A stretch of DNA of 64,000 nucleotides from Intoshia linei (taxonomy: Eukaryota > Animalia > Orthonectida): positions 65,649 through 129,648 of the forward strand of contig LWCA01000003.1 in NCBI GenBank assembly GCA_001642005.1. Direction: 5' to 3'. The position numbers were made by a program, and so were the translations under genes. This document shows, piece after piece, positions 25,601-34,038 of this stretch (position 1 is the stretch's first letter; each line of letters opens with the position of its first letter). The notes under the pieces were generated by a model. The model saw only the letters and a program-made list of their open reading frames with translations. It was not told the DNA's origin and ran no database searches.

Positions 25601-28511
25601 TATTTTATAAACTCTGCCTTTTTTTATTTTTAAAAAAAAGGGTATTTGTGGTTGTGCCCATGAAGGTGTAAGTTTCTGAGGCTGAGATTTACGACAAGCT
25701 TAATGATTTTAAAACGCGTCCTAGATTTATGTTTTTTGAAATTTTAGGACTTTTCATTTTTTAAATACACGCCAACACAGATTTAATTTTATATAAGTAA
25801 TGGATAATGATAAAAACAATAATGATGTATTTATTTTTTAGAATTAACGAGATGATTGAGCCTGAGGATTCTTACAGTTTTTCTTAATATTAGGAACTAA
25901 TGTAAGCTTTAATTGTAGATCTTGTTTTGAAATTTCAAGTCAAGAGCATTAGAGATGTTAAAAATAAAATAATACATTAAATGCCTAGGGCTATGTAACA
26001 CTACGCATCGTTTGTGAATTTTTTTATTGCTTATTTTTCATTTTCGAGTGGCCTTGAGCTAGGTAGGTTTGGCTATGCTAATATTGTTTGAATTTTGTGA
26101 GTTTGAATTAAATTAATAAGTTTTATATACAGATATTAATTTGACCGCTACTTTCCAGTTTTTAATGGTGAGTAAAATTAAAAATGATGTGTAAAATCTT
26201 TATTTATGGAACGATGGTTTAAAACAGGCATTCTTAACCTTTTTTGAACCATCCTCAGATTAAAAAAATTAATCTAAAGTTTTCATAATCCTATAAATTC
26301 GTAATATTTTCCATGCCCCACCAAGTTTCCAATGTCCTATCAAAAATTTCGTCATGCCTACGGTTGAGAAACGCTGGTTTAAATGGAGTTCTAGGTTCAA
26401 AAGAAATTACATTATATAACTGAATTTTATCTTAATTGGCTAATATTGTATTTCATACATTTAGGCTATATAAACCCTCTGAGTGTTGTAATAGTAGATC
26501 AATACAAGTTCAAGCTGTGTGGATTTGACTACAGTCGCCCTAAAGAACAATCACAAAGTAAAATTAGTGGATATCATCCCGTTTCAGATATATTTAATGT
26601 AAATAATTATGAAAATTTATTGTTTGGGGATATTATGCTCAACAAACACCTTTTACTGTATTCTGCTTCAAAGTTTATAAAATTACATTTAAACGTTAAT
26701 AATCTAAAAATTGCCAATTTTATTAAAGGAGACAGTGTTGATAGGGTATGGATTCAGATTTTATGAGTTTATTTTATTTTATCAACAGGTAGCGAGAATA
26801 ATTCAATACATCCAAAGAACTTTAACAACATCCTATTTGTCTGTGGAATATGCAACTGAAATGGAACAAAAAATTTCAAAATTATTCATGTGCAATTATG
26901 AATCTTGTCCAAATTCAGTGGGCATACCCATCATAGACATTTCTAAGACCTGCGACCAATTTCAAGTTTTAGATTACCTAACTAAAAATGCATTTTTTGA
27001 TCACGTTACCGAAAATTTTGATATTTTACCGTCTAATTTTCTAAAATATAAAATTCTTAAAATTATTGAATTAGAAATCAAGTTTAATGCTTCTTCAATG
27101 TACCTTATCAAGTGTTTCTACAAGGTAAAAATGTTTATTGTGTTTTTGATACAATTTAGATTATGAATCTTGAATTTTCAGATTTTGAATATACTAGCCA
27201 AGTTTTACCTATTTTAACCAAAATATTTCACATGTCAGATCGTATTATTCGAGTTGAATTGTTAGATCATGTTGAATTTTATTTTCCATTTATTTTATCA
27301 TAATGTAGTTACTACACTGTAATGTGGGATATACGTCGAATAATATATATTTTAACAAAAATATTGTACCTCATCTTTTTCAAGGATTTAAGGATTCAAA
27401 CAGTACTATACGAGAAAAAACTATATTTGTAAATGTTTTAAATGCAATTTCTTTACTCTTAATTAGCTAGATTAATTTAATTAATATTTATTTAATTAAC
27501 TTAATTTCTTAATCTAGGTAGCTACCAAATTGGTCACACACTATGATTATCCCAATTTAAACGATAAATTTTTCAAATATCTTATTGGTCCTCTTTTAAA
27601 AGACCCAGATGTAATTAGTTTTATATTAAAAATATCCGTGTTTAGGTTAACATACGACGAAACACATTAGTTTCTATCAGATACGTTGCTTCCAATGTGG
27701 ATGCAAGTGTAATTATTTTTATAAAAATTCCAATTGTATATTTTATTAGTTGAGATCAAAAGTACTGGCACCCATCTTACTTTCGAAATTAGACGATGAC
27801 CAACCGACAGTCGTACTGGCGGCGATATCTGCAATTTTAGAATTAGTTGAACTTTTTTCTGTTAATCATTTGGCAACCCGTATCATACCTGGCTTATCAC
27901 CATTGTTAATTAATCCCAACCTTGAAGTGAGAAATAATAGTTTTAAAGTGGTAAATCAAATAATTCAAGTACTGGAAGGCTTTTCTAAAAATCCTGCGAA
28001 ACTTGTCGATTGGAGTAATGTACAATTTATAATATTTAATAATAAACTAGATAAACAGTCAAACGTGCATTCAGGTGTTATTAACCCTAGTTGGTCTAAA
28101 TGGGCACTTGATAGTGTTATGAAAATCAATGAAAAATTGTCCACCACGTTTACGTCGAACAAGCATAACAGAAATACCGAATCAGAAGAATCAGAACCAA
28201 AAAAAGATATAAATCTTGGTGCAAATGATTTACCCGATTCTCTTGAAAAACAAAATTATATAAAAACAAAATTTAACCCACCTCCATCAACTGAAAATAC
28301 GCACGAAAAAAAGAATATTAAATTAACATTAAAAAAGAAATATGCAAATATTCCGGAAGACGAAATTAAAATTGATGACTTTTGTCCAGAAATTAATGAA
28401 ATTGATCAGAAATGGCCCACCTTTTCTATCGATTCGATAGATAATTATCAAAAAAATATCACTAAATCAAACGGAAAAGACAAAGAAATGGAATGGGGTA
28501 GAGAATGGTGA
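22624..28511 (+). CDS. SCYL1: SCY1-like pseudokinase 1 (N-terminal kinase-like domain plus HEAT repeats)
   Basis: MWKLFSTDPLSNFKY, KTGQDFTAFVYE, IRSMRYPGIVQYVDSLD, FLHNECSLIHG, FKLCGFDY, DRIIRVELL, GFKDSNSTIREKT, LATRIIPGLSPLLINPNLEVRNNSF. Confidence 0.9.
24271..24508. mobile_element. hAT MITE in a SCYL1 intron
   Basis: Termini cagggtg / caccctg; perfect TSD atctaaat. Confidence 0.75.
24797..25219. mobile_element. hAT MITE (same family as 13871-14341)
   Basis: Termini cagtggctccc / ggaaccattg; TSD ttttagat/gtttagat. Another element (caatgtttcccaa) starts directly after the TSD at 25228. Confidence 0.75.
26225..26376. mobile_element. Short hAT MITE
   Basis: Termini caggcattcttaacc / ggttgagaaacgctg; TSD gtttaaaa/gtttaaat. 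Confidence 0.65.
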
Positions 28512-28535
28512 AATTTATAATATTTTAATAAACAT

Positions 28536-30890
28536 TTATAAAAAACTATTCATTACGGCATAATATAGTGCGGCAATATCTGAGTGGTCCGATATTTTAA
28601 AAAACGGCCAAACAATCTAAAATATTAAATTCAAAAAAATAAGATTACACTGATAGTTTTTTCTTTTACATCTGGCTTTTTTATGCTTTAAAAATGCCCA
28701 AAAATGTAGTCTTCCTCAATTAATAATGATTTGATAATATTTACCCAGTTGTGAATAATAAAAGACTTAAAAATATCAATAATTTTTCTAGAAAATTATC
28801 AAATGTATTAGGGAATAATTTAGTTTTGTCTGGACAACTTAAAAATCTCAATGGATATATGTAACCCATAAATATTGAGAAATTCGGCCGATAAAAGTAG
28901 AGAATAAAAAAATTAATACCGTTTTACTCACGACTTCTTCGTTCTTTTGCGATCCTACTACAACGATATTTATATCATTGGCGTACTTTGCTTTTATTCT
29001 TTCATAACATGATTCAATATCTAAAATAAATTGATTAACTTAGTTTTGTATAAATTTACTTGATTTGTGATAGCTGTAAATGTTATCAATATCAAAATAA
29101 TTTGCCAAATCATGTACCATAATTTTTGATAGTATTGGAATTAGTTTGTCTGAAGTAATGGCAATGTTTACGCAATTTTTTCTATGTATGAAATATATAG
29201 ATATGAATTGTAAATTACCTTTTCTTTATAAGAGAAATTGATTTTTTCATGGTGCTCAACCTGGTAATAAAATTTTGAAATCAAAGTTTTTAATTGGTTT
29301 TCTTTGACTATTCTTGAAATAAAGGGATACTCAGAATCTTGTATTTTTAGATGTGGAAAAGAAATTTTGGTCCGATTAGAAGACGGCTACGTGGTCATCA
29401 GGGCCATTGAGAGCCAGCAGTAGGCCAGGGCCAGATAGAAATTGTAGGCCCTTATATAAAAATTTATGACTGGACCCACAAAGGTTAAAATTGACGTCAA
29501 ATTTTTAATATATCATGATATTTTTGCCCGGTCGAGTTATTTATAATAAAAAATTAATAATAAATTATTTTCGACAACCACGATAAGCATTTTTCTACCA
29601 TTACCTGATTTAGAATATTGGACCCGTCATATGAACCCTAACTCATTTTACATTCCCTGGTTGGATGTATATCATTATTTGCTTAGGGCCATTATTTAAA
29701 AAATATATATTTACCACAATTCTAGATATTCATCCATCTGGGCCATTGTTTGTAACCAATTTGTGTATTCATTATTTGTAAAAAAATCTATTGATAAACT
29801 AAATATTTAGCCATATGAAAAAGAAACCTTGAGGATTAGATATAAAATTTTGATACTTATTTTTAATATTCATATATCTGAGAGACAATTTTTTCATAAA
29901 ATCAACACCATTTTTTGAATTTAAGGGCGATTCGTTCATATTCCTCATCCTGTCTTGAAAACCATCTTGTACGAAATTGTAAGAGGAAACGTTTATTTGA
30001 CTTTCGTCCATTGTTACATCATTGATATGCATGTGATTGCAATTCTAGAATTTTAACAATTAGAAAATAATGAATTTATCAAATGATAAAATTTGATGAA
30101 TAAATAAATACTGATATTACCTCTAAATCATCAAGAAATAGATATGTTCTAGCTAAAGTATAAGCTATATGTTCACACTTAATCGCCATCTCTCTGCATT
30201 GCTCGATGTTCTAATGCAAATGAAATAATTTACTCAATTATAAATTTACCTTATTAAACCTTTGAGCATATTTAGCCGACTTCATAAATTCGAGTAAAAC
30301 AAAAGTGTTGTCTACATTCCATATAAAAATTTGTTTAATTTTTTCTTCTGCACCTTCTTCCAAAAGTTCGGCTTTCAACCCAGTTTTTTCTTCAAAATTA
30401 ATTAAATGTAAAAAAATGTTACCTTTTTTAAGAGTGACACTATTTTCACTGGGAGACGACGCACTATGCGTCAATTGAATATTTTCTTCGTCAGCTATTT
30501 ATTTTTATGAAAAATGTAAAAATTAAAAATCTTACCCATAGATGAATGTAAGATTTTGTATTTGATGTTGGAATCGATACTATTAGCACCTTGCGAATAT
30601 TGTCGTAACAAGTATCTATCTTGTGGAATAGCGTATGGATAATTACAAATATAATTGGGATAAAATAGAGATGCGTCTAATATATTAAAATATATCATTG
30701 AAAATCATTACTAGTATTGGTAAGCGAAAAATTTGGTTTAGATAAATACGATAAACCGGGAACTTGATTATAATTTTGATTAGGGTTTGATAATTCTCCA
30801 ATATAATTCTACATTTACCATTTTAATTGTCAAACATTAATCTAACCTCTGATATCTTTTTAACTTTCATTTTTTCATCCTCTGAAATAT
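28536..30890 (-). CDS. EYA: Eyes absent homolog (Eya domain, catalytic residues degenerate)
   Basis: IKQIFIWNVDNTFVLL..KYAQRFNK, GVDFMKKLSLRY, CVNIAITSDKLIPILSKIMVHDLANYFDIDNIYS, ESCYEEI, IVVVGSQKNEE and WPFFKISDHSDIAALYYAVMNSFL* align colinearly with the Eya domain. Upstream exons are Tyr/Ser/Pro-rich. Confidence 0.92.
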
Positions 30891-32183
30891 CTAATGATAA
30901 TAAAATTCTGATTTAATTATGTGGATGACATCCAGTTAAGGTTTGAATATTGATTATTAAAATAAACATATGCTAAAATTTAGTTGACTATAGGTTTGTC
31001 AACTTGATATTTGATACGGTATTAGATTACATTAACGTTATTACATTTTACAATTCATTTACTAACGATTTTTTATCTCCACATTATACAAACATATGTT
31101 TTGTGTCAACATCATATTCATCACAAATTTTCACACATACATTAGTATATTAGTCATTCTAGTTAGTAAACGAAACGAAAATTAAAAAGACAATAGTTTG
31201 CTTCATTTTATGCATTTGTCATATTGATTCAATCTGTTATTAGATTTTACATTTCTATAATCTCTTGTGACATTTTGTAAACGACATTGGATTATAATTT
31301 ATAAACAATTTGTTTTAATTTCATTATAGCTACTATGCAATTATAATCTTATTAATCTTTCAATTACGTACAAGTTCATCAACTCATTTTATAAAATTAT
31401 CATGTAAATTCTAAATATCCCAATTAATCATAATTATCGTCTTTAAAAATTTTTTGCCATTTAAATGAATTGTTTACTCACATGCGTAATTTCTAAAAAA
31501 ATACACGCTTATAATTGTAATTTAATACTATAAGTGTGTTAATTGGAGCAATGGTTCATTTATTTCGTATAATATCACGAAACATTAACCTCTTTAGTGC
31601 TACAACCTCTCGAAATTACAAAAAATCATCAATATACACCGTTTTGTCAATTATATAATTTGAGTTGATTTAAATTTTTAATATTACCGCGGATGTACTG
31701 AATTATAATTTAATGTTAATTATTTTTTCAATTTTAAAAAATGTATGATTATGTGATTGGTGAAAAATGGGTAACGGACCAGATTAATGTGTAATAATTT
31801 GGAATACACGGTTTTACATGTTAAAAATACACTCTATTTTTTTATTCATTCTGTTATTGACCCATTTTGTATGAATTTATGAAATATATTTAGAAATATT
31901 TTTTACAAATGTAGTAGAAAGTACCCATCTATTTTAAAAAAAAATGTAAGTTATCTCCGTTAATTGGAAATTTTAATTTTTTTAAAATTTGTATGCAATT
32001 GGTGTCACAAATCGAAATAGTTATTATTTGAGAGAACGTTACCTGGTTAAATCTATAAATTTAGCGAAGTTTCAACATATATATTTTTTTCCAATTTATC
32101 AAAAAATAGTATACATTTGTATCGTGCATGGATATTGCATGGATACAATACATTTTGAATTATTATGTGTCAGGGATTTAGAG

Positions 32184-32505
32184 CAGGCATTCTCAACCCT
32201 TTTTCAGTGTGAACCTTGTCAATGGTATTGAAAAAACTTATTATTAAAGTTATTATAATTATAATTATTAATTAACCAAATTTTTTTTGATTCAACTGAT
32301 TATGAGATATTTCCGAACTCGATGTTTAATATTTATGAAAATTATATATTTATTACACTGTCACTTTATCTCAGTGAATCCCAAATTTGCGATAAAAATT
32401 TCCTCTTAGAACCAAAAAATTCATCAACGCCCCACTCTATATTATTATATCATATTTTTTAAAATCGCCCCGTATGGGCGATACCACCCACTTTGGGAGC
32501 CCCTA
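32184..32505. mobile_element. hAT MITE
   Basis: Termini caggcattctcaacc / tttgggagccccta; degenerate TSD atttagag/gtttaaag. Confidence 0.55.
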
Positions 32506-33210
32506 GTTTAAAGAGTCAACTGGAAAAATATATTTAATATTTGAAAATACTTTTTATATAAAACAATTAAAACAAAAACAACAATGTGAAATTGTTGTAA
32601 AATTTTTGTTCATAATATTACTATTTTTGTGTAATTAAGGCTCACGAATAAACTGAAAAGCTTCGTTAAGTGGTAAAGGAACCTGTTTTAGATTTTTTTT
32701 AATATCAAATTTATTTGAAATTGAATCTAATACTTTAATTTGAAATGCCTGTAATCTATTTTAATTTAACTAATATGTCAAGTTTGATACAATGATATAT
32801 TTTTACTTTATGTCATGTTGTGTAATTTTTGAATTAGTTTGAGTTCTATTTAAAAATAATAAAAAATATTAAAAAATTATAAATTACCATATGATAACAT
32901 ATAGTACTGGAGAAGAAAATTCGGGAACGGTTACATTACGCGTAATAATTGCAAACTTTTCACATAAATATAATTGATAATGGCAGTTCAATTTATCGTT
33001 TAATTATGGCAAATTAAGTTAATTAAAAGTGACTTATTATCATTAAAAATGAATTTTTAAATTTTATTTAGAAGCGTAAATTTAGGCACACGAGCCGAGA
33101 CGGCATAAGCTATTAAGGATTCTTTTATTTAAAAAAATTATTTAATTTTCACTTACCTTCCAAGAATTATACATCATTCTCCAAAAAAAAGTTGGCTTGA
33201 ACCCAAGATT

Positions 33211-34038
33211 TTAACTTGGTAGTAGACGTTCATATTTTTTAAGTATTGTAATTAACGGAAAAGTATGATTCTTCGAAAATATTGTATATATAAAAGGCTC
33301 TGGTATATTTATTTTTACTATATTGCTGTAAGAGCATGTTATACCACTGAAAATTTTACCTATGGATTCGGCATGTGAATTTTGATTTTCCATATTAATG
33401 CAATTATTTTCAGATTCGTAAATTGAATAAAAACTAGGAAAATTGACTTGATTTGTTTGTAAATTGGGATTTTCATTATATTCGCACATTTGATAATAAG
33501 AACAGTTCTCCATTGAGGGGTTTGGATTTTGTTCAAAATGAGTTTCCAAAGTGTCAACATGTTCTAAATTGCCCGAATGTTTTAGAATCTTATAGGGTTT
33601 ATCAGAAATTTTGTCATTTATGTATCTGTAATATTTTTTATCGCTGTAAATTTTTGAATCTTCATATTTTGTCAAGAGCGAGTCTTCATATGAAATATTA
33701 TGAGGTTTATCGGGTTCACATTGTGCCTCGTTTGACTCAGTTTGTGTGACATCTTCCAAATTATAAAATTCACAATCCTTAGAGTCTGGTTTAAATTCTG
33801 CAGTAGCAAAATTGCCGTTCAACCACGAATTTAATGATTGTACATTTTTATCTGAATAATCAGAATCAAATTTCAGGGTTTCCAATTGTTGATAATCGTT
33901 TGTCTTGTATATGCAACCTTCTTCAGACTCTACCAAATCTTGAAATTGGTCAAATGTTGTATTGTTTGGTACTTCTGTTTCGTCTGAAGAACTGTGCATT
34001 TGATGCAATGTTGATTCTTTTTGAAATTCCTCACTCAT
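33211..34038 (-). CDS. Acidic low-complexity ORF, probably the 5' exon of EYA
   Basis: 275-codon ORF. A phase-1 donor (ATAG|gtaaaa at 33360/33359) is compatible with the phase-1 EYA acceptor at 30890. It could instead be a separate gene. Confidence 0.55.
   Translation of the reverse strand: MSEEFQKESTLHQMHSSSDETEVPNNTTFDQFQDLVESEEGCIYKTNDYQQLETLKFDSDYSDKNVQSLNSWLNGNFATAEFKPDSKDCEFYNLEDVTQTESNEAQCEPDKPHNISYEDSLLTKYEDSKIYSDKKYYRYINDKISDKPYKILKHSGNLEHVDTLETHFEQNPNPSMENCSYYQMCEYNENPNLQTNQVNFPSFYSIYESENNCINMENQNSHAESIGKIFSGITCSYSNIVKINIPEPFIYTIFSKNHTFPLITILKKYERLLPS

What the first reader, a model, noticed from the sequence alone, without database searches (positions are those of the whole stretch)
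28536..30340. Eyes absent ortholog appears to be a natural pseudophosphatase
Seen: motif I reads WNVDNT (Asn codon at 30316-30318) instead of WDLDET. The motif III GK-ESC lysine is Ile (N-I-ESC, 29016-29018). Motif IV GDGxEE reads GSQKNEE (28947-28955). The 21-residue spacing between the K and D positions is preserved exactly, so the register is secure. Known: these are the nucleophile Asp, phosphate-binding Lys and Mg-binding Asp of the EYA HAD tyrosine phosphatase, and Asp-to-Asn at the nucleophile is the standard inactivating mutation. Inference: all three changed while the ORF, splice sites and surrounding pattern stayed intact. That suggests selection keeps only the Six/So co-activator or scaffold role, a natural test of whether EYA phosphatase activity is dispensable.
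Basis: partly seen in the sequence, partly recalled or inferred. Interest (0 to 1): 0.8.

Follow-up and report, generated by a model that had tools for sequence, protein, structure and literature searches.

The report
Eyes-absent gene without phosphatase residues

Summary
The window is Intoshia linei DNA. The gene is OAF72146.1 / A3Q56_00087, 643 aa, with 12 GT-AG exons on the minus strand at 34038-28536.

Its EYA domain aligns with human EYA2 with a single 1-residue gap (194 bits). The register is therefore secure:
- Nucleophile D274 is N380.
- K480 is I585.
- The motif IV Asp D502 is S607.
- D382, T384, T552/S553 and E611 are kept.

It is the only EYA locus in the 41.6 Mb assembly.

It does not look like a decaying pseudogene. 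The frame is open where about 8.7% of intron codons are stops. It keeps 61% of near-invariant EYA columns. The predicted fold matches EYA2 (target-normalised TM-score 0.90). The alanine whose mutation breaks SIX binding is kept. A Six1/2 gene 71% identical to human SIX1 is present.

Most likely it is a Six co-activator with no phosphatase activity. Expression, selection (dN/dS) and activity were not testable here.

Three points temper the novelty:
- Three tardigrade EYAs have also lost catalytic residues.
- Schizophoran flies lack the motif III lysine, so K-to-I alone is weak evidence.
- Phosphatase-dead eya already rescues eya-null flies.

Other first-stage notes list several candidate pseudoenzymes in this genome. 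I rate it a new variant of a known kind, of moderate interest.

The parts
28536..34038 (-). Whole EYA gene of Intoshia linei (OAF72146.1 / A3Q56_00087; P0001, 643 aa). Twelve coding exons: 34038-33360, 30890-30847, 30808-30712, 30676-30536, 30494-30250, 30210-30121, 30044-29828, 29787-29715, 29260-29219, 29181-29060, 29020-28920, 28616-28536 (stop TAA 28538-28536).
   Evidence: The exons reproduce P0001 exactly and all junctions are GT-AG.
33360..34038 (-). Exon 1, residues 1-226. This is the start of the poorly conserved N-terminal half (residues 1-368), predicted to be disordered. It is presumably the transactivation region.
   Evidence: No Pfam match. pLDDT is below 50 across residues 12-368.
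28536..30494 (-). Exons 5-12, which encode the EYA domain (residues about 371-643): a HAD core with a helix-bundle cap.
   Evidence: TIGR01658 matches end to end (positions 2-272 of 274) at E 2.6e-51 and 175 bits, below the curated cut-off of 195.3. Human EYA2 domain: 194 bits, E 3.9e-56. The AlphaFold2 model has pLDDT above 90 for most of the domain. The Foldseek top hits are EYA2 at target-normalised TM-score 0.88-0.91.
30304..30321 (-). Motif I, W379-N380-V381-D382-N383-T384 (family consensus WDLDET). The nucleophile Asp is Asn (AAT, 30318-30316). The second Asp and the Thr are kept.
29151..29156 (-). Motif II, T552-S553 (human T447-T448). It is kept.
29016..29018 (-). Motif III position, I585 (ATT) in place of human K480. 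The preceding Gly is Asn584, encoded by a split codon (29060 plus 29020-29019). K582 is kept.
28935..28955 (-). Motif IV, G606-S607-Q608-K609-N610-E611-E612 (consensus G-D-G-x-D/E-E-E). The Asp equivalent to human D502 is Ser (TCG, three base changes away from GAT or GAC). E611, equivalent to human E506 and fly E728, is kept.
   Evidence: The mapping of fly E728 and the human numbers D502/E506 were obtained by counting from the C-terminus (inference).
28557..28559 (-). A637, the position of human EYA2 A532 in the C-terminal helix. It is kept.
   Evidence: Alignment. PMC8504185 states that the A532R mutant disrupts interaction with SIX proteins.
29397..29467 (.). A copy of a short dispersed repeat inside intron 8. 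It accounts for that intron being 454 nt where most introns of this gene are 35-41 nt.
   Evidence: At least 40 further copies at 80-93% identity elsewhere in the genome.

Best explanation
This is the single, functional EYA ortholog of the orthonectid Intoshia linei, and its EYA domain has become a pseudophosphatase. The HAD fold, the helix-bundle cap and the C-terminal helix that holds the SIX-binding alanine are retained. The aspartyl nucleophile (D to N380), the motif IV Asp (D to S607) and the motif III lysine (K to I585) are gone, so no phospho-aspartyl intermediate can form. The protein most likely works as in the co-activator half of the EYA model: the EYA domain docks on the N-terminal helix of the Six domain of the well-conserved Six1/2 protein, and the disordered N-terminal half supplies activation.

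Shown here: gene integrity, residue changes, single copy, predicted fold, presence of a partner.

Inferred: lack of activity, Six binding, expression, selection.
For: - Register and substitutions.
- Only one EYA locus in the 41.6 Mb assembly, and no alternative motif I exon in the window.
- Twelve exons, all GT-AG. The 643 codons are open where stop codons make up 8.7% of intron triplets, so P(open by chance) is about 5e-26. Exon GC is 0.304 against 0.246 in introns.
- It keeps 51 of 84 (61%) near-invariant columns against 33% identity overall. Most replacements are conservative. The non-conservative ones include the active-site changes D380N, E383N, G584N and K585I, although R375Q, R490M, T526L and several D-to-N changes lie elsewhere.
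- The S607 codon (TCG) is three changes from GAT or GAC, and the I585 codon (ATT) is two changes from AAA or AAG. The loss is therefore old, yet the frame has stayed open.
- Fold: pLDDT above 90 for most of the domain, and target-normalised TM-score 0.90 to EYA2.
- A637 corresponds to EYA2 A532 and is kept.
- The C-terminal core segment is the best conserved, at 49% identity to consensus.
- The Six1/2 ortholog gives 245 bits in an ungapped alignment, 101 of 143 identical to human SIX1, with its first helix included.
- D-to-N at this position kills activity in fly and human EYA (PMC3595212; PMC8504185).
- Phosphatase-dead eya rescues eya-null flies.
- Three tardigrade EYAs independently lack catalytic residues.
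Against: - There are no expression data, no dN/dS and no assay.
- The domain is by far the fastest-evolving EYA sampled: terminal branch 1.45 substitutions per site against less than 0.6 for all others. It falls below the curated TIGR01658 cut-off. Some relaxation of constraint is therefore real, and the remaining function is inferred.
- The AlphaFold model leans on an alignment of canonical EYAs.
- The Six-contact surface was checked at only one residue.
- D-to-N changes are common in this AT-rich gene (D435N, D440N, D450N). N380 alone could be mutational drift in a protein whose activity was already lost for another reason.
Confidence: 0.75

Rival explanations
1. It is a decaying pseudogene. 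The gene is no longer used, and the active-site changes are part of general erosion.
For: It has the longest branch in the family. Its score is below the curated family cut-off. No transcript-derived fragments were found in the protein collections, although a blank there is uninformative.
Against: All 643 codons are open and 11 of 11 introns have GT-AG, in a genome where 8.7% of non-coding triplets are stops. It keeps 61% of near-invariant columns, with mostly conservative replacements. The codon changes at S607 and I585 are multi-step, so the divergence is old; an unused gene would have accumulated stops and frameshifts over that time. It is also the only EYA gene, while Six1/2 is well kept.
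Confidence: 0.05
2. It is still a phosphatase or another hydrolase, using migrated or alternative residues. For example, D382 could act as nucleophile, with E611/E612 and K582 substituting.
For: D382, T384, T552/S553, K582, E611 and E612 are kept. Flies tolerate H or Q at the K480 position. Reviews of pseudoenzymes note that catalytic residues can migrate (abstract of PMC10211241, listed).
Against: In HAD enzymes the first Asp of DxDxT is the obligatory nucleophile. Its D-to-N mutant is inactive in fly and human EYA. Here the motif IV Asp is also lost.
Confidence: 0.07
3. It has gained a new role as a binding module. The dead pocket, or the well-kept helix-bundle cap, would bind a phosphoprotein or another partner in the way STYX-type pseudophosphatases do, instead of or in addition to Six co-activation.
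For: Many invariant residues of the helix-bundle cap are kept: C434, H438, D441, D445, Y454, F456, D459, G460, F461, K484, L485, R488. These have no obvious role in Six binding. D-to-N nucleophile mutants of HAD enzymes can trap substrates (general knowledge).
Against: Loss of the motif IV Asp and of the lysine should also weaken phosphate binding. There is no direct evidence for this role. It is compatible with the best explanation rather than exclusive of it.
Confidence: 0.1
4. It is an assembly or annotation artefact, or a canonical EYA copy is missing from the draft assembly.
For: The assembly is a draft of 3520 contigs. A single-base error could create AAT from GAT.
Against: Three separate sites are changed, two of them by two or three bases. 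The contig is 129.6 kb, and its composition and roughly 38-nt introns are uniform along the gene. A six-frame profile search of the whole assembly finds no other EYA piece.
Confidence: 0.03

Closest known systems
Canonical EYA proteins (human EYA1-4, Drosophila Eyes absent): Six-family co-activators with a HAD-type tyrosine phosphatase domain
   Same: Same architecture: a disordered N-terminal half and a C-terminal EYA domain of about 270 aa. The domain aligns end to end with human EYA2 (one 1-residue gap) and has the same predicted fold (target-normalised TM-score 0.90). The A532-equivalent alanine is kept. It is a single-copy ortholog, as in most invertebrates.
   Different: The nucleophile Asp, the motif IV Asp and the motif III Lys are replaced. 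Identity is only 33%, against about 62% among other animals. The score is below the curated equivalog cut-off.
Engineered phosphatase-dead eya alleles in Drosophila (D493N, E728Q; PMC3595212, PMC5673202)
   Same: The same nucleophile D-to-N change. Those alleles fully rescue eya-null flies, which shows that an EYA without this activity can carry the developmental function.
   Different: Those are laboratory point mutants in an otherwise canonical domain, and they lose robustness when so or dac dose is halved. Here the change is natural, combined with further active-site losses, and old. The E728 equivalent (E611) is kept.
Tardigrade EYA proteins (Ramazzottius varieornatus GAV07135.1, Paramacrobiotus metropolitanus, Hypsibius exemplaris)
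   Same: These are natural EYAs lacking catalytic residues. Ramazzottius has WNLDET with GNG and Paramacrobiotus has WNLDET with GSG. Hypsibius has K to R, GNK, and the E506 equivalent changed to V. Like the Intoshia protein, none has a precomputed PF00702 hit.
   Different: They are much less diverged overall: 264 bits to TIGR01658 for Ramazzottius, above the cut-off. The lysine is kept in two of the three. The lineage is independent (Ecdysozoa rather than a spiralian parasite). I did not test whether these species have a second, intact EYA.
Known pseudophosphatases (STYX/MK-STYX of the cysteine-based families; from memory, the FCP/SCP-like HAD domain of TIM50)
   Same: An enzyme fold is retained with the catalytic nucleophile lost, and the protein is used as a binding or scaffolding module.
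   Different: They belong to different families, and they exist alongside active paralogs. Here the organism's only EYA is the inactive one.

Membership tests
EYA family (TIGR01658 EYA-cons_domain) | C-terminal EYA domain of about 270 aa matching the family profile end to end | tested here: met
   Profile positions 2-272 of 274, E 2.6e-51. Human EYA2 domain at 194 bits with one 1-residue gap. Five of the seven exons scanned also match collinearly on their own.
EYA family (TIGR01658 EYA-cons_domain) | Score above the curated equivalog cut-off (195.3 bits) | tested here: not met
   175.0 bits. A clam EYA scores 376, Cladonema 310 and Ramazzottius 264. Homology is not in doubt, but functional equivalence is not certified by the model.
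EYA family (TIGR01658 EYA-cons_domain) | HAD core with a helix-bundle cap inserted between motifs I and II | tested here: met
   In the AlphaFold2 model pLDDT is above 90 for most of the domain, lower in part of the cap insert (about residues 431-480). Foldseek top hits are EYA2 domain structures at target-normalised TM-score 0.88-0.91. The model depends on an alignment of canonical EYAs.
EYA family (TIGR01658 EYA-cons_domain) | Binding to the Six domain of Six1/2- or Six4/5-class proteins | not testable with these tools
   Indirect evidence only: A637 corresponds to EYA2 A532 and is kept, and a Six1/2 ortholog with a conserved first helix is present.
Active HAD-type phosphatase | Motif I DxDxT with the first Asp as nucleophile | tested here: not met
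   N-V-D-N-T. The Asp is present in 145 of 148 full-length EYA domains.
Active HAD-type phosphatase | Motif II Ser/Thr | tested here: met
   T552-S553 lie opposite human T447-T448.
Active HAD-type phosphatase | Motif III Lys | tested here: not met
   I585 lies opposite human K480. Caveat: schizophoran flies have H or Q at this position, so this feature is not strictly required in EYAs.
Active HAD-type phosphatase | Motif IV acidic pair that binds Mg2+ (GDGxxE in EYA) | tested here: not met
   The Asp is replaced by S607; the Glu is kept as E611.
Pseudoenzyme (pseudophosphatase) | Enzyme fold retained with catalytic residues missing | tested here: met
Pseudoenzyme (pseudophosphatase) | Expressed and maintained by selection (that is, not a pseudogene) | tested here: inconclusive
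   Indirect support comes from the open 643-codon frame, GT-AG at all 11 introns, and 61% of near-invariant columns kept. No transcript or dN/dS evidence could be obtained.

The most novel reading that the evidence does not exclude
EYA tyrosine-phosphatase activity has been discarded independently in at least two animal lineages, orthonectids and eutardigrades, with a possible partial loss in hydrozoans. In these lineages the organism's EYA gene is kept intact. This would show in nature that the indispensable, ancestral job of the EYA domain is a non-catalytic one, most likely Six-dependent co-activation, and that the enzyme activity is an accessory that small or simplified animals can lose.
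Probability: 0.5. Interest if true: 0.6.

Novelty: new variant of a known kind. Interest (0 to 1): 0.5.

Why it matters
Whether EYA's tyrosine phosphatase activity matters for development has been debated for two decades. Overexpression and in vitro work said it does. Genomic rescue in flies said it does not (PMC3595212). Sensitised backgrounds suggested it adds robustness (PMC5673202).

An animal whose only EYA gene lacks the nucleophile and the motif IV Asp, yet keeps the fold and a conserved Six1/2 partner, is natural evidence on the 'dispensable' side. The tardigrade parallel found here makes it a repeated outcome rather than an oddity.

It also gives a natural set of substitutions for separating the scaffold and enzyme functions of the domain. 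Databases name this protein by homology as an Eyes absent homolog. Any catalytic annotation transferred to it or to the tardigrade proteins on that basis is probably wrong.

Tried and rejected
- **Second EYA copy.** A six-frame TIGR01658 search of the whole assembly found only this gene. A regular-expression scan of the window found no alternative motif I exon.
- **Closer relatives for dN/dS.** Three routes found none. The word search with the largest exon gave nothing. The same search with the EYA domain of P0001 returned only P0001. The full HMMER search gave nothing closer than 44% identity on that exon.
- **Transcript or alternative-assembly evidence.** The exact look-up returned nothing on record. 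That tool may withhold records of the window's own genome.
- **Pfam on single exons.** Nothing useful.
- **Last exon alone against PDB.** Too short to score. The whole-protein alignment replaced it.
- **Literature.** I found no paper in the held library on EYA in orthonectids, on EYA pseudophosphatases, or on tardigrade EYA catalysis. The SIX1-EYA2 structure paper is not held, so the full Six interface could not be mapped. Only A532 could be mapped, through PMC8504185.
- **RNA genes.** Rfam and tRNA scans of the window found nothing.
- **My first donor guess for exon 11 (28932).** Rejected in favour of the annotated donor at 28920, which restores the family spacing.
- **An hmmalign offset error.** It produced wrong site letters and was corrected.

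Full report
**What is there**

The window has 26.8% G+C. It is part of contig C2844 of a 41.6 Mb, 3520-contig assembly.

Reading the minus strand at 28400-30500 shows a run of short exons separated by introns of about 40 nt. Their translations look like an EYA domain. I searched each exon separately, by reference. Five of the seven exons long enough to scan hit NCBIfam TIGR01658 (EYA-cons_domain) in collinear order: profile positions 2-29, 63-118, 174-212, 216-243 and 251-273 of 274. Pfam gave nothing for single exons.

A full HMMER search with the largest exon (72 aa) returned a 643-aa database protein, P0001, that contains the exon at 100% identity. All eight of my exon translations are found in it. 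The exact look-up names it OAF72146.1, hypothetical protein A3Q56_00087 of Intoshia linei, UniProt A0A177BD89 'Eyes absent homolog'.

I handed no self-joined spliced model to any search. Whole-protein work used the database protein by its id. The only joining was inside a script, to check that 12 exons reproduce P0001 exactly. They do, and all 11 introns are GT-AG. The gene spans 34038-28536 on the minus strand.

**Checking the observation**

- 30318-30316 is AAT, the Asn in W-N-V-D-N-T.
- 29018-29016 is ATT, the Ile in N-I-E-S-C.
- 28955-28947 is GGA TCG CAA, giving G-S-Q, followed by K-N-E-E.

Exon-level alignments to solved structures place these residues opposite WDLDET, GKESC and GDG of human EYA3 and EYA2. 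P0001 aligns to the human EYA2 domain (chain 4egc_B) over 271 residues with one 1-residue gap, at 194 bits and E 3.9e-56. The register is therefore secure.

In human EYA2 numbering:
- N380 = D274. Papers confirm D274 as the nucleophile and D274N as the dead mutant (PMC8504185).
- I585 = K480.
- S607 = D502.
- E611 = E506.

The last three human numbers come from counting along the chain and back from the C-terminus, and are my inference. By the same counting, E611 equals fly E728, one of the two residues mutated in the fly rescue study.

Kept residues are D382, T384, T552/S553 (motif II), K582, E611 and E612.

This adds four residues (V-S-K-T) and restores the exact human spacing to the following P-F motif.

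**Is this more than family variation?**

I collected 148 full-length EYA domains from the two protein searches and aligned them to a profile.
- 106 carry the complete canonical set.
- The nucleophile Asp is absent only in Intoshia and in two tardigrades, Ramazzottius varieornatus and Paramacrobiotus metropolitanus. Both read WNLDET.
- The motif IV Asp is absent in Intoshia and in all three tardigrades (GNG, GSG, and GNK in Hypsibius exemplaris). It is also absent in the hydrozoan Cladonema radiatum and in one unnamed Logan protein.
- The motif III lysine is H in tephritid flies. It is Q in calyptrate flies, Glossina and Teleopsis.

Fly EYA is reported to be active in vitro (background in PMC3595212). 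The K-to-I change alone is therefore weak evidence. The case for inactivity rests on the nucleophile and the motif IV Asp.

**Single copy**

A six-frame profile search of the whole assembly found EYA-like pieces only in this gene. A pattern scan of the window found no alternative exon with a canonical motif I.

**Gene or pseudogene?**

No close relative could be found (best identity on the exon was 44%). No transcript evidence was reachable. So dN/dS and expression remain untested. The indirect evidence favours a live gene:
- 643 codons are open in a sequence context where 8.66% of intron triplets are stops, so P(open by chance) is about 5e-26 (about 2e-11 for the domain alone). All splice sites are canonical. 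Exons are richer in G+C than introns, 0.304 against 0.246.
- Overall identity to other EYA domains is 33%, against 62% among the others. Yet 51 of the 84 columns that are near-invariant in the others are kept (61%). Most replacements are conservative, such as L/V, I/V, W/F, R/K and F/Y. The non-conservative ones include the active-site changes D380N, E383N, G584N and K585I, although others such as R375Q, R490M, T526L and several D-to-N changes lie outside it.
- The S607 codon is three base changes from an Asp codon, and the I585 codon is two from a Lys codon. The active site was therefore lost long ago, yet the frame has stayed open since.
- AlphaFold2 predicts the domain with pLDDT above 90 for most of its length (lower in part of the cap insert) and the N-terminal 368 residues as disordered. 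Foldseek's best hits are EYA2 domain structures at target-normalised TM-score 0.88-0.91 and 33% identity. The model depends on an alignment of canonical EYAs.

**Partner**

The genome holds several Six-domain loci and two Ski/Dach-type loci.

The best Six locus (contig C1530) encodes a Six1/2-class protein. It aligns without gaps to human SIX1 at 245 bits, with 101 of 143 residues identical by my count from the printed alignment. The match includes the first helix of the Six domain and the ETSY signature. A second locus looks Six3/6-like (class assigned from memory of the diagnostic tetrapeptide).

On the EYA side, the alanine whose A532R mutation disrupts SIX binding (PMC8504185) is kept as A637. 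The C-terminal core segment is the best conserved part of the domain, at 49% identity to consensus against 27-40% elsewhere.

The contrast between 71% identity for Six1/2 and 33% for the EYA domain shows that EYA has accelerated beyond the genome's general rate. Its terminal branch is 1.45 substitutions per site, against less than 0.6 for every other EYA sampled. This fits a domain released from the constraints of catalysis but still held by fold and partner binding.

**Mechanism proposed**

The Intoshia protein acts as a non-catalytic EYA. The domain docks on Six1/2, and possibly on other Six or Dach proteins. The disordered N-terminal half provides activation. No phospho-aspartyl chemistry is possible.

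I put this at about 0.75. The rivals are:
- a decaying pseudogene (0.05);
- residual or altered catalysis through migrated residues (0.07);
- a new phospho-binding or other binding role, perhaps through the well-kept helix-bundle cap (0.10, and not exclusive of the main reading);
- an assembly artefact or a missing second copy (0.03).

**Comparison with what is known**

Homology to EYA is certain. However, the protein falls below the curated equivalog cut-off (175 against 195.3 bits), and it fails three of the four HAD motif tests. It should be filed as an EYA-family member that is not an active HAD phosphatase.

The concept is not new. Pseudophosphatases are well known. Phosphatase-dead eya (D493N, E728Q, or both) fully rescues eya-null flies (PMC3595212), although with reduced robustness when so or dac dose is halved (PMC5673202).

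I found no paper in the held library that describes a natural EYA lacking catalytic residues, in orthonectids or tardigrades. The library is incomplete, so this is not proof of novelty.

First-stage notes of this scan list several other candidate pseudoenzymes in the same genome. I did not check them. If they hold, loss of catalytic residues is a general habit of this fast-evolving parasite, which lowers the surprise of any single case.

**Verdict**

I rate it a new variant of a known kind, of moderate interest (0.5). The tardigrade parallel is the most useful addition, because it makes loss of EYA catalysis a repeated natural outcome.

Noticed in passing
Proteins P0029 (Ramazzottius varieornatus GAV07135.1), P0114 (Paramacrobiotus metropolitanus) and P0095 (Hypsibius exemplaris); not in the window: All three eutardigrade EYA proteins lack catalytic residues. 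Two have Asn at the nucleophile (WNLDET). All three have lost the motif IV Asp (GNG, GSG, GNK). Hypsibius also has K to R and has lost the second acidic residue. None has a precomputed PF00702 hit. This looks like an independent natural EYA pseudophosphatase lineage.
   Followed up: partly
Proteins P0038 (Cladonema radiatum BAJ22814.1) and P0027 (unnamed Logan protein): The motif IV Asp is Asn (GNR and GNG), while motifs I-III are canonical. This may be a weakened Mg2+ site in a hydrozoan EYA.
   Followed up: no
Proteins P0050 and P0073-P0086 (tephritid flies); P0130, P0133-P0142 and P0196 (calyptrate flies, Glossina, Teleopsis): Schizophoran fly EYAs carry H or Q in place of the motif III 'GK' lysine (human K480). 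A sand fly (Lutzomyia) and other arthropods keep K. This lysine is therefore not a reliable marker of EYA activity.
   Followed up: partly
window 29397-29467 (inside intron 8, 29261-29714): A short element of about 60-70 nt, relatively G+C-rich, is repeated at least 40 times across the genome at 80-93% identity. It is probably a small interspersed repeat. It explains why this intron is 454 nt where its neighbours are about 38 nt.
   Followed up: partly
window 27750-28511 (+): A 253-aa open frame with HEAT repeats (PF02985, E 5.8e-7) converges on the EYA gene. It ends 25 nt from the EYA stop codon, so the two 3' ends are almost back to back.
   Followed up: partly
G000 contig C3493 (loci L006, L008, L009, L011) and contigs C174, C181: Several further SIX-domain matches lie here, including a cluster on one contig. 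An earlier first-stage note describes a tandem SIX pair with a remodelled second copy. I did not determine which Six proteins the catalytically dead EYA could bind.
   Followed up: no
window 30421-30389 (-): A 33-nt stretch (GT...AG) inside annotated exon 5 could be spliced out in frame, removing 11 residues upstream of the EYA domain. The annotation reads through it. This does not affect the finding.
   Followed up: no
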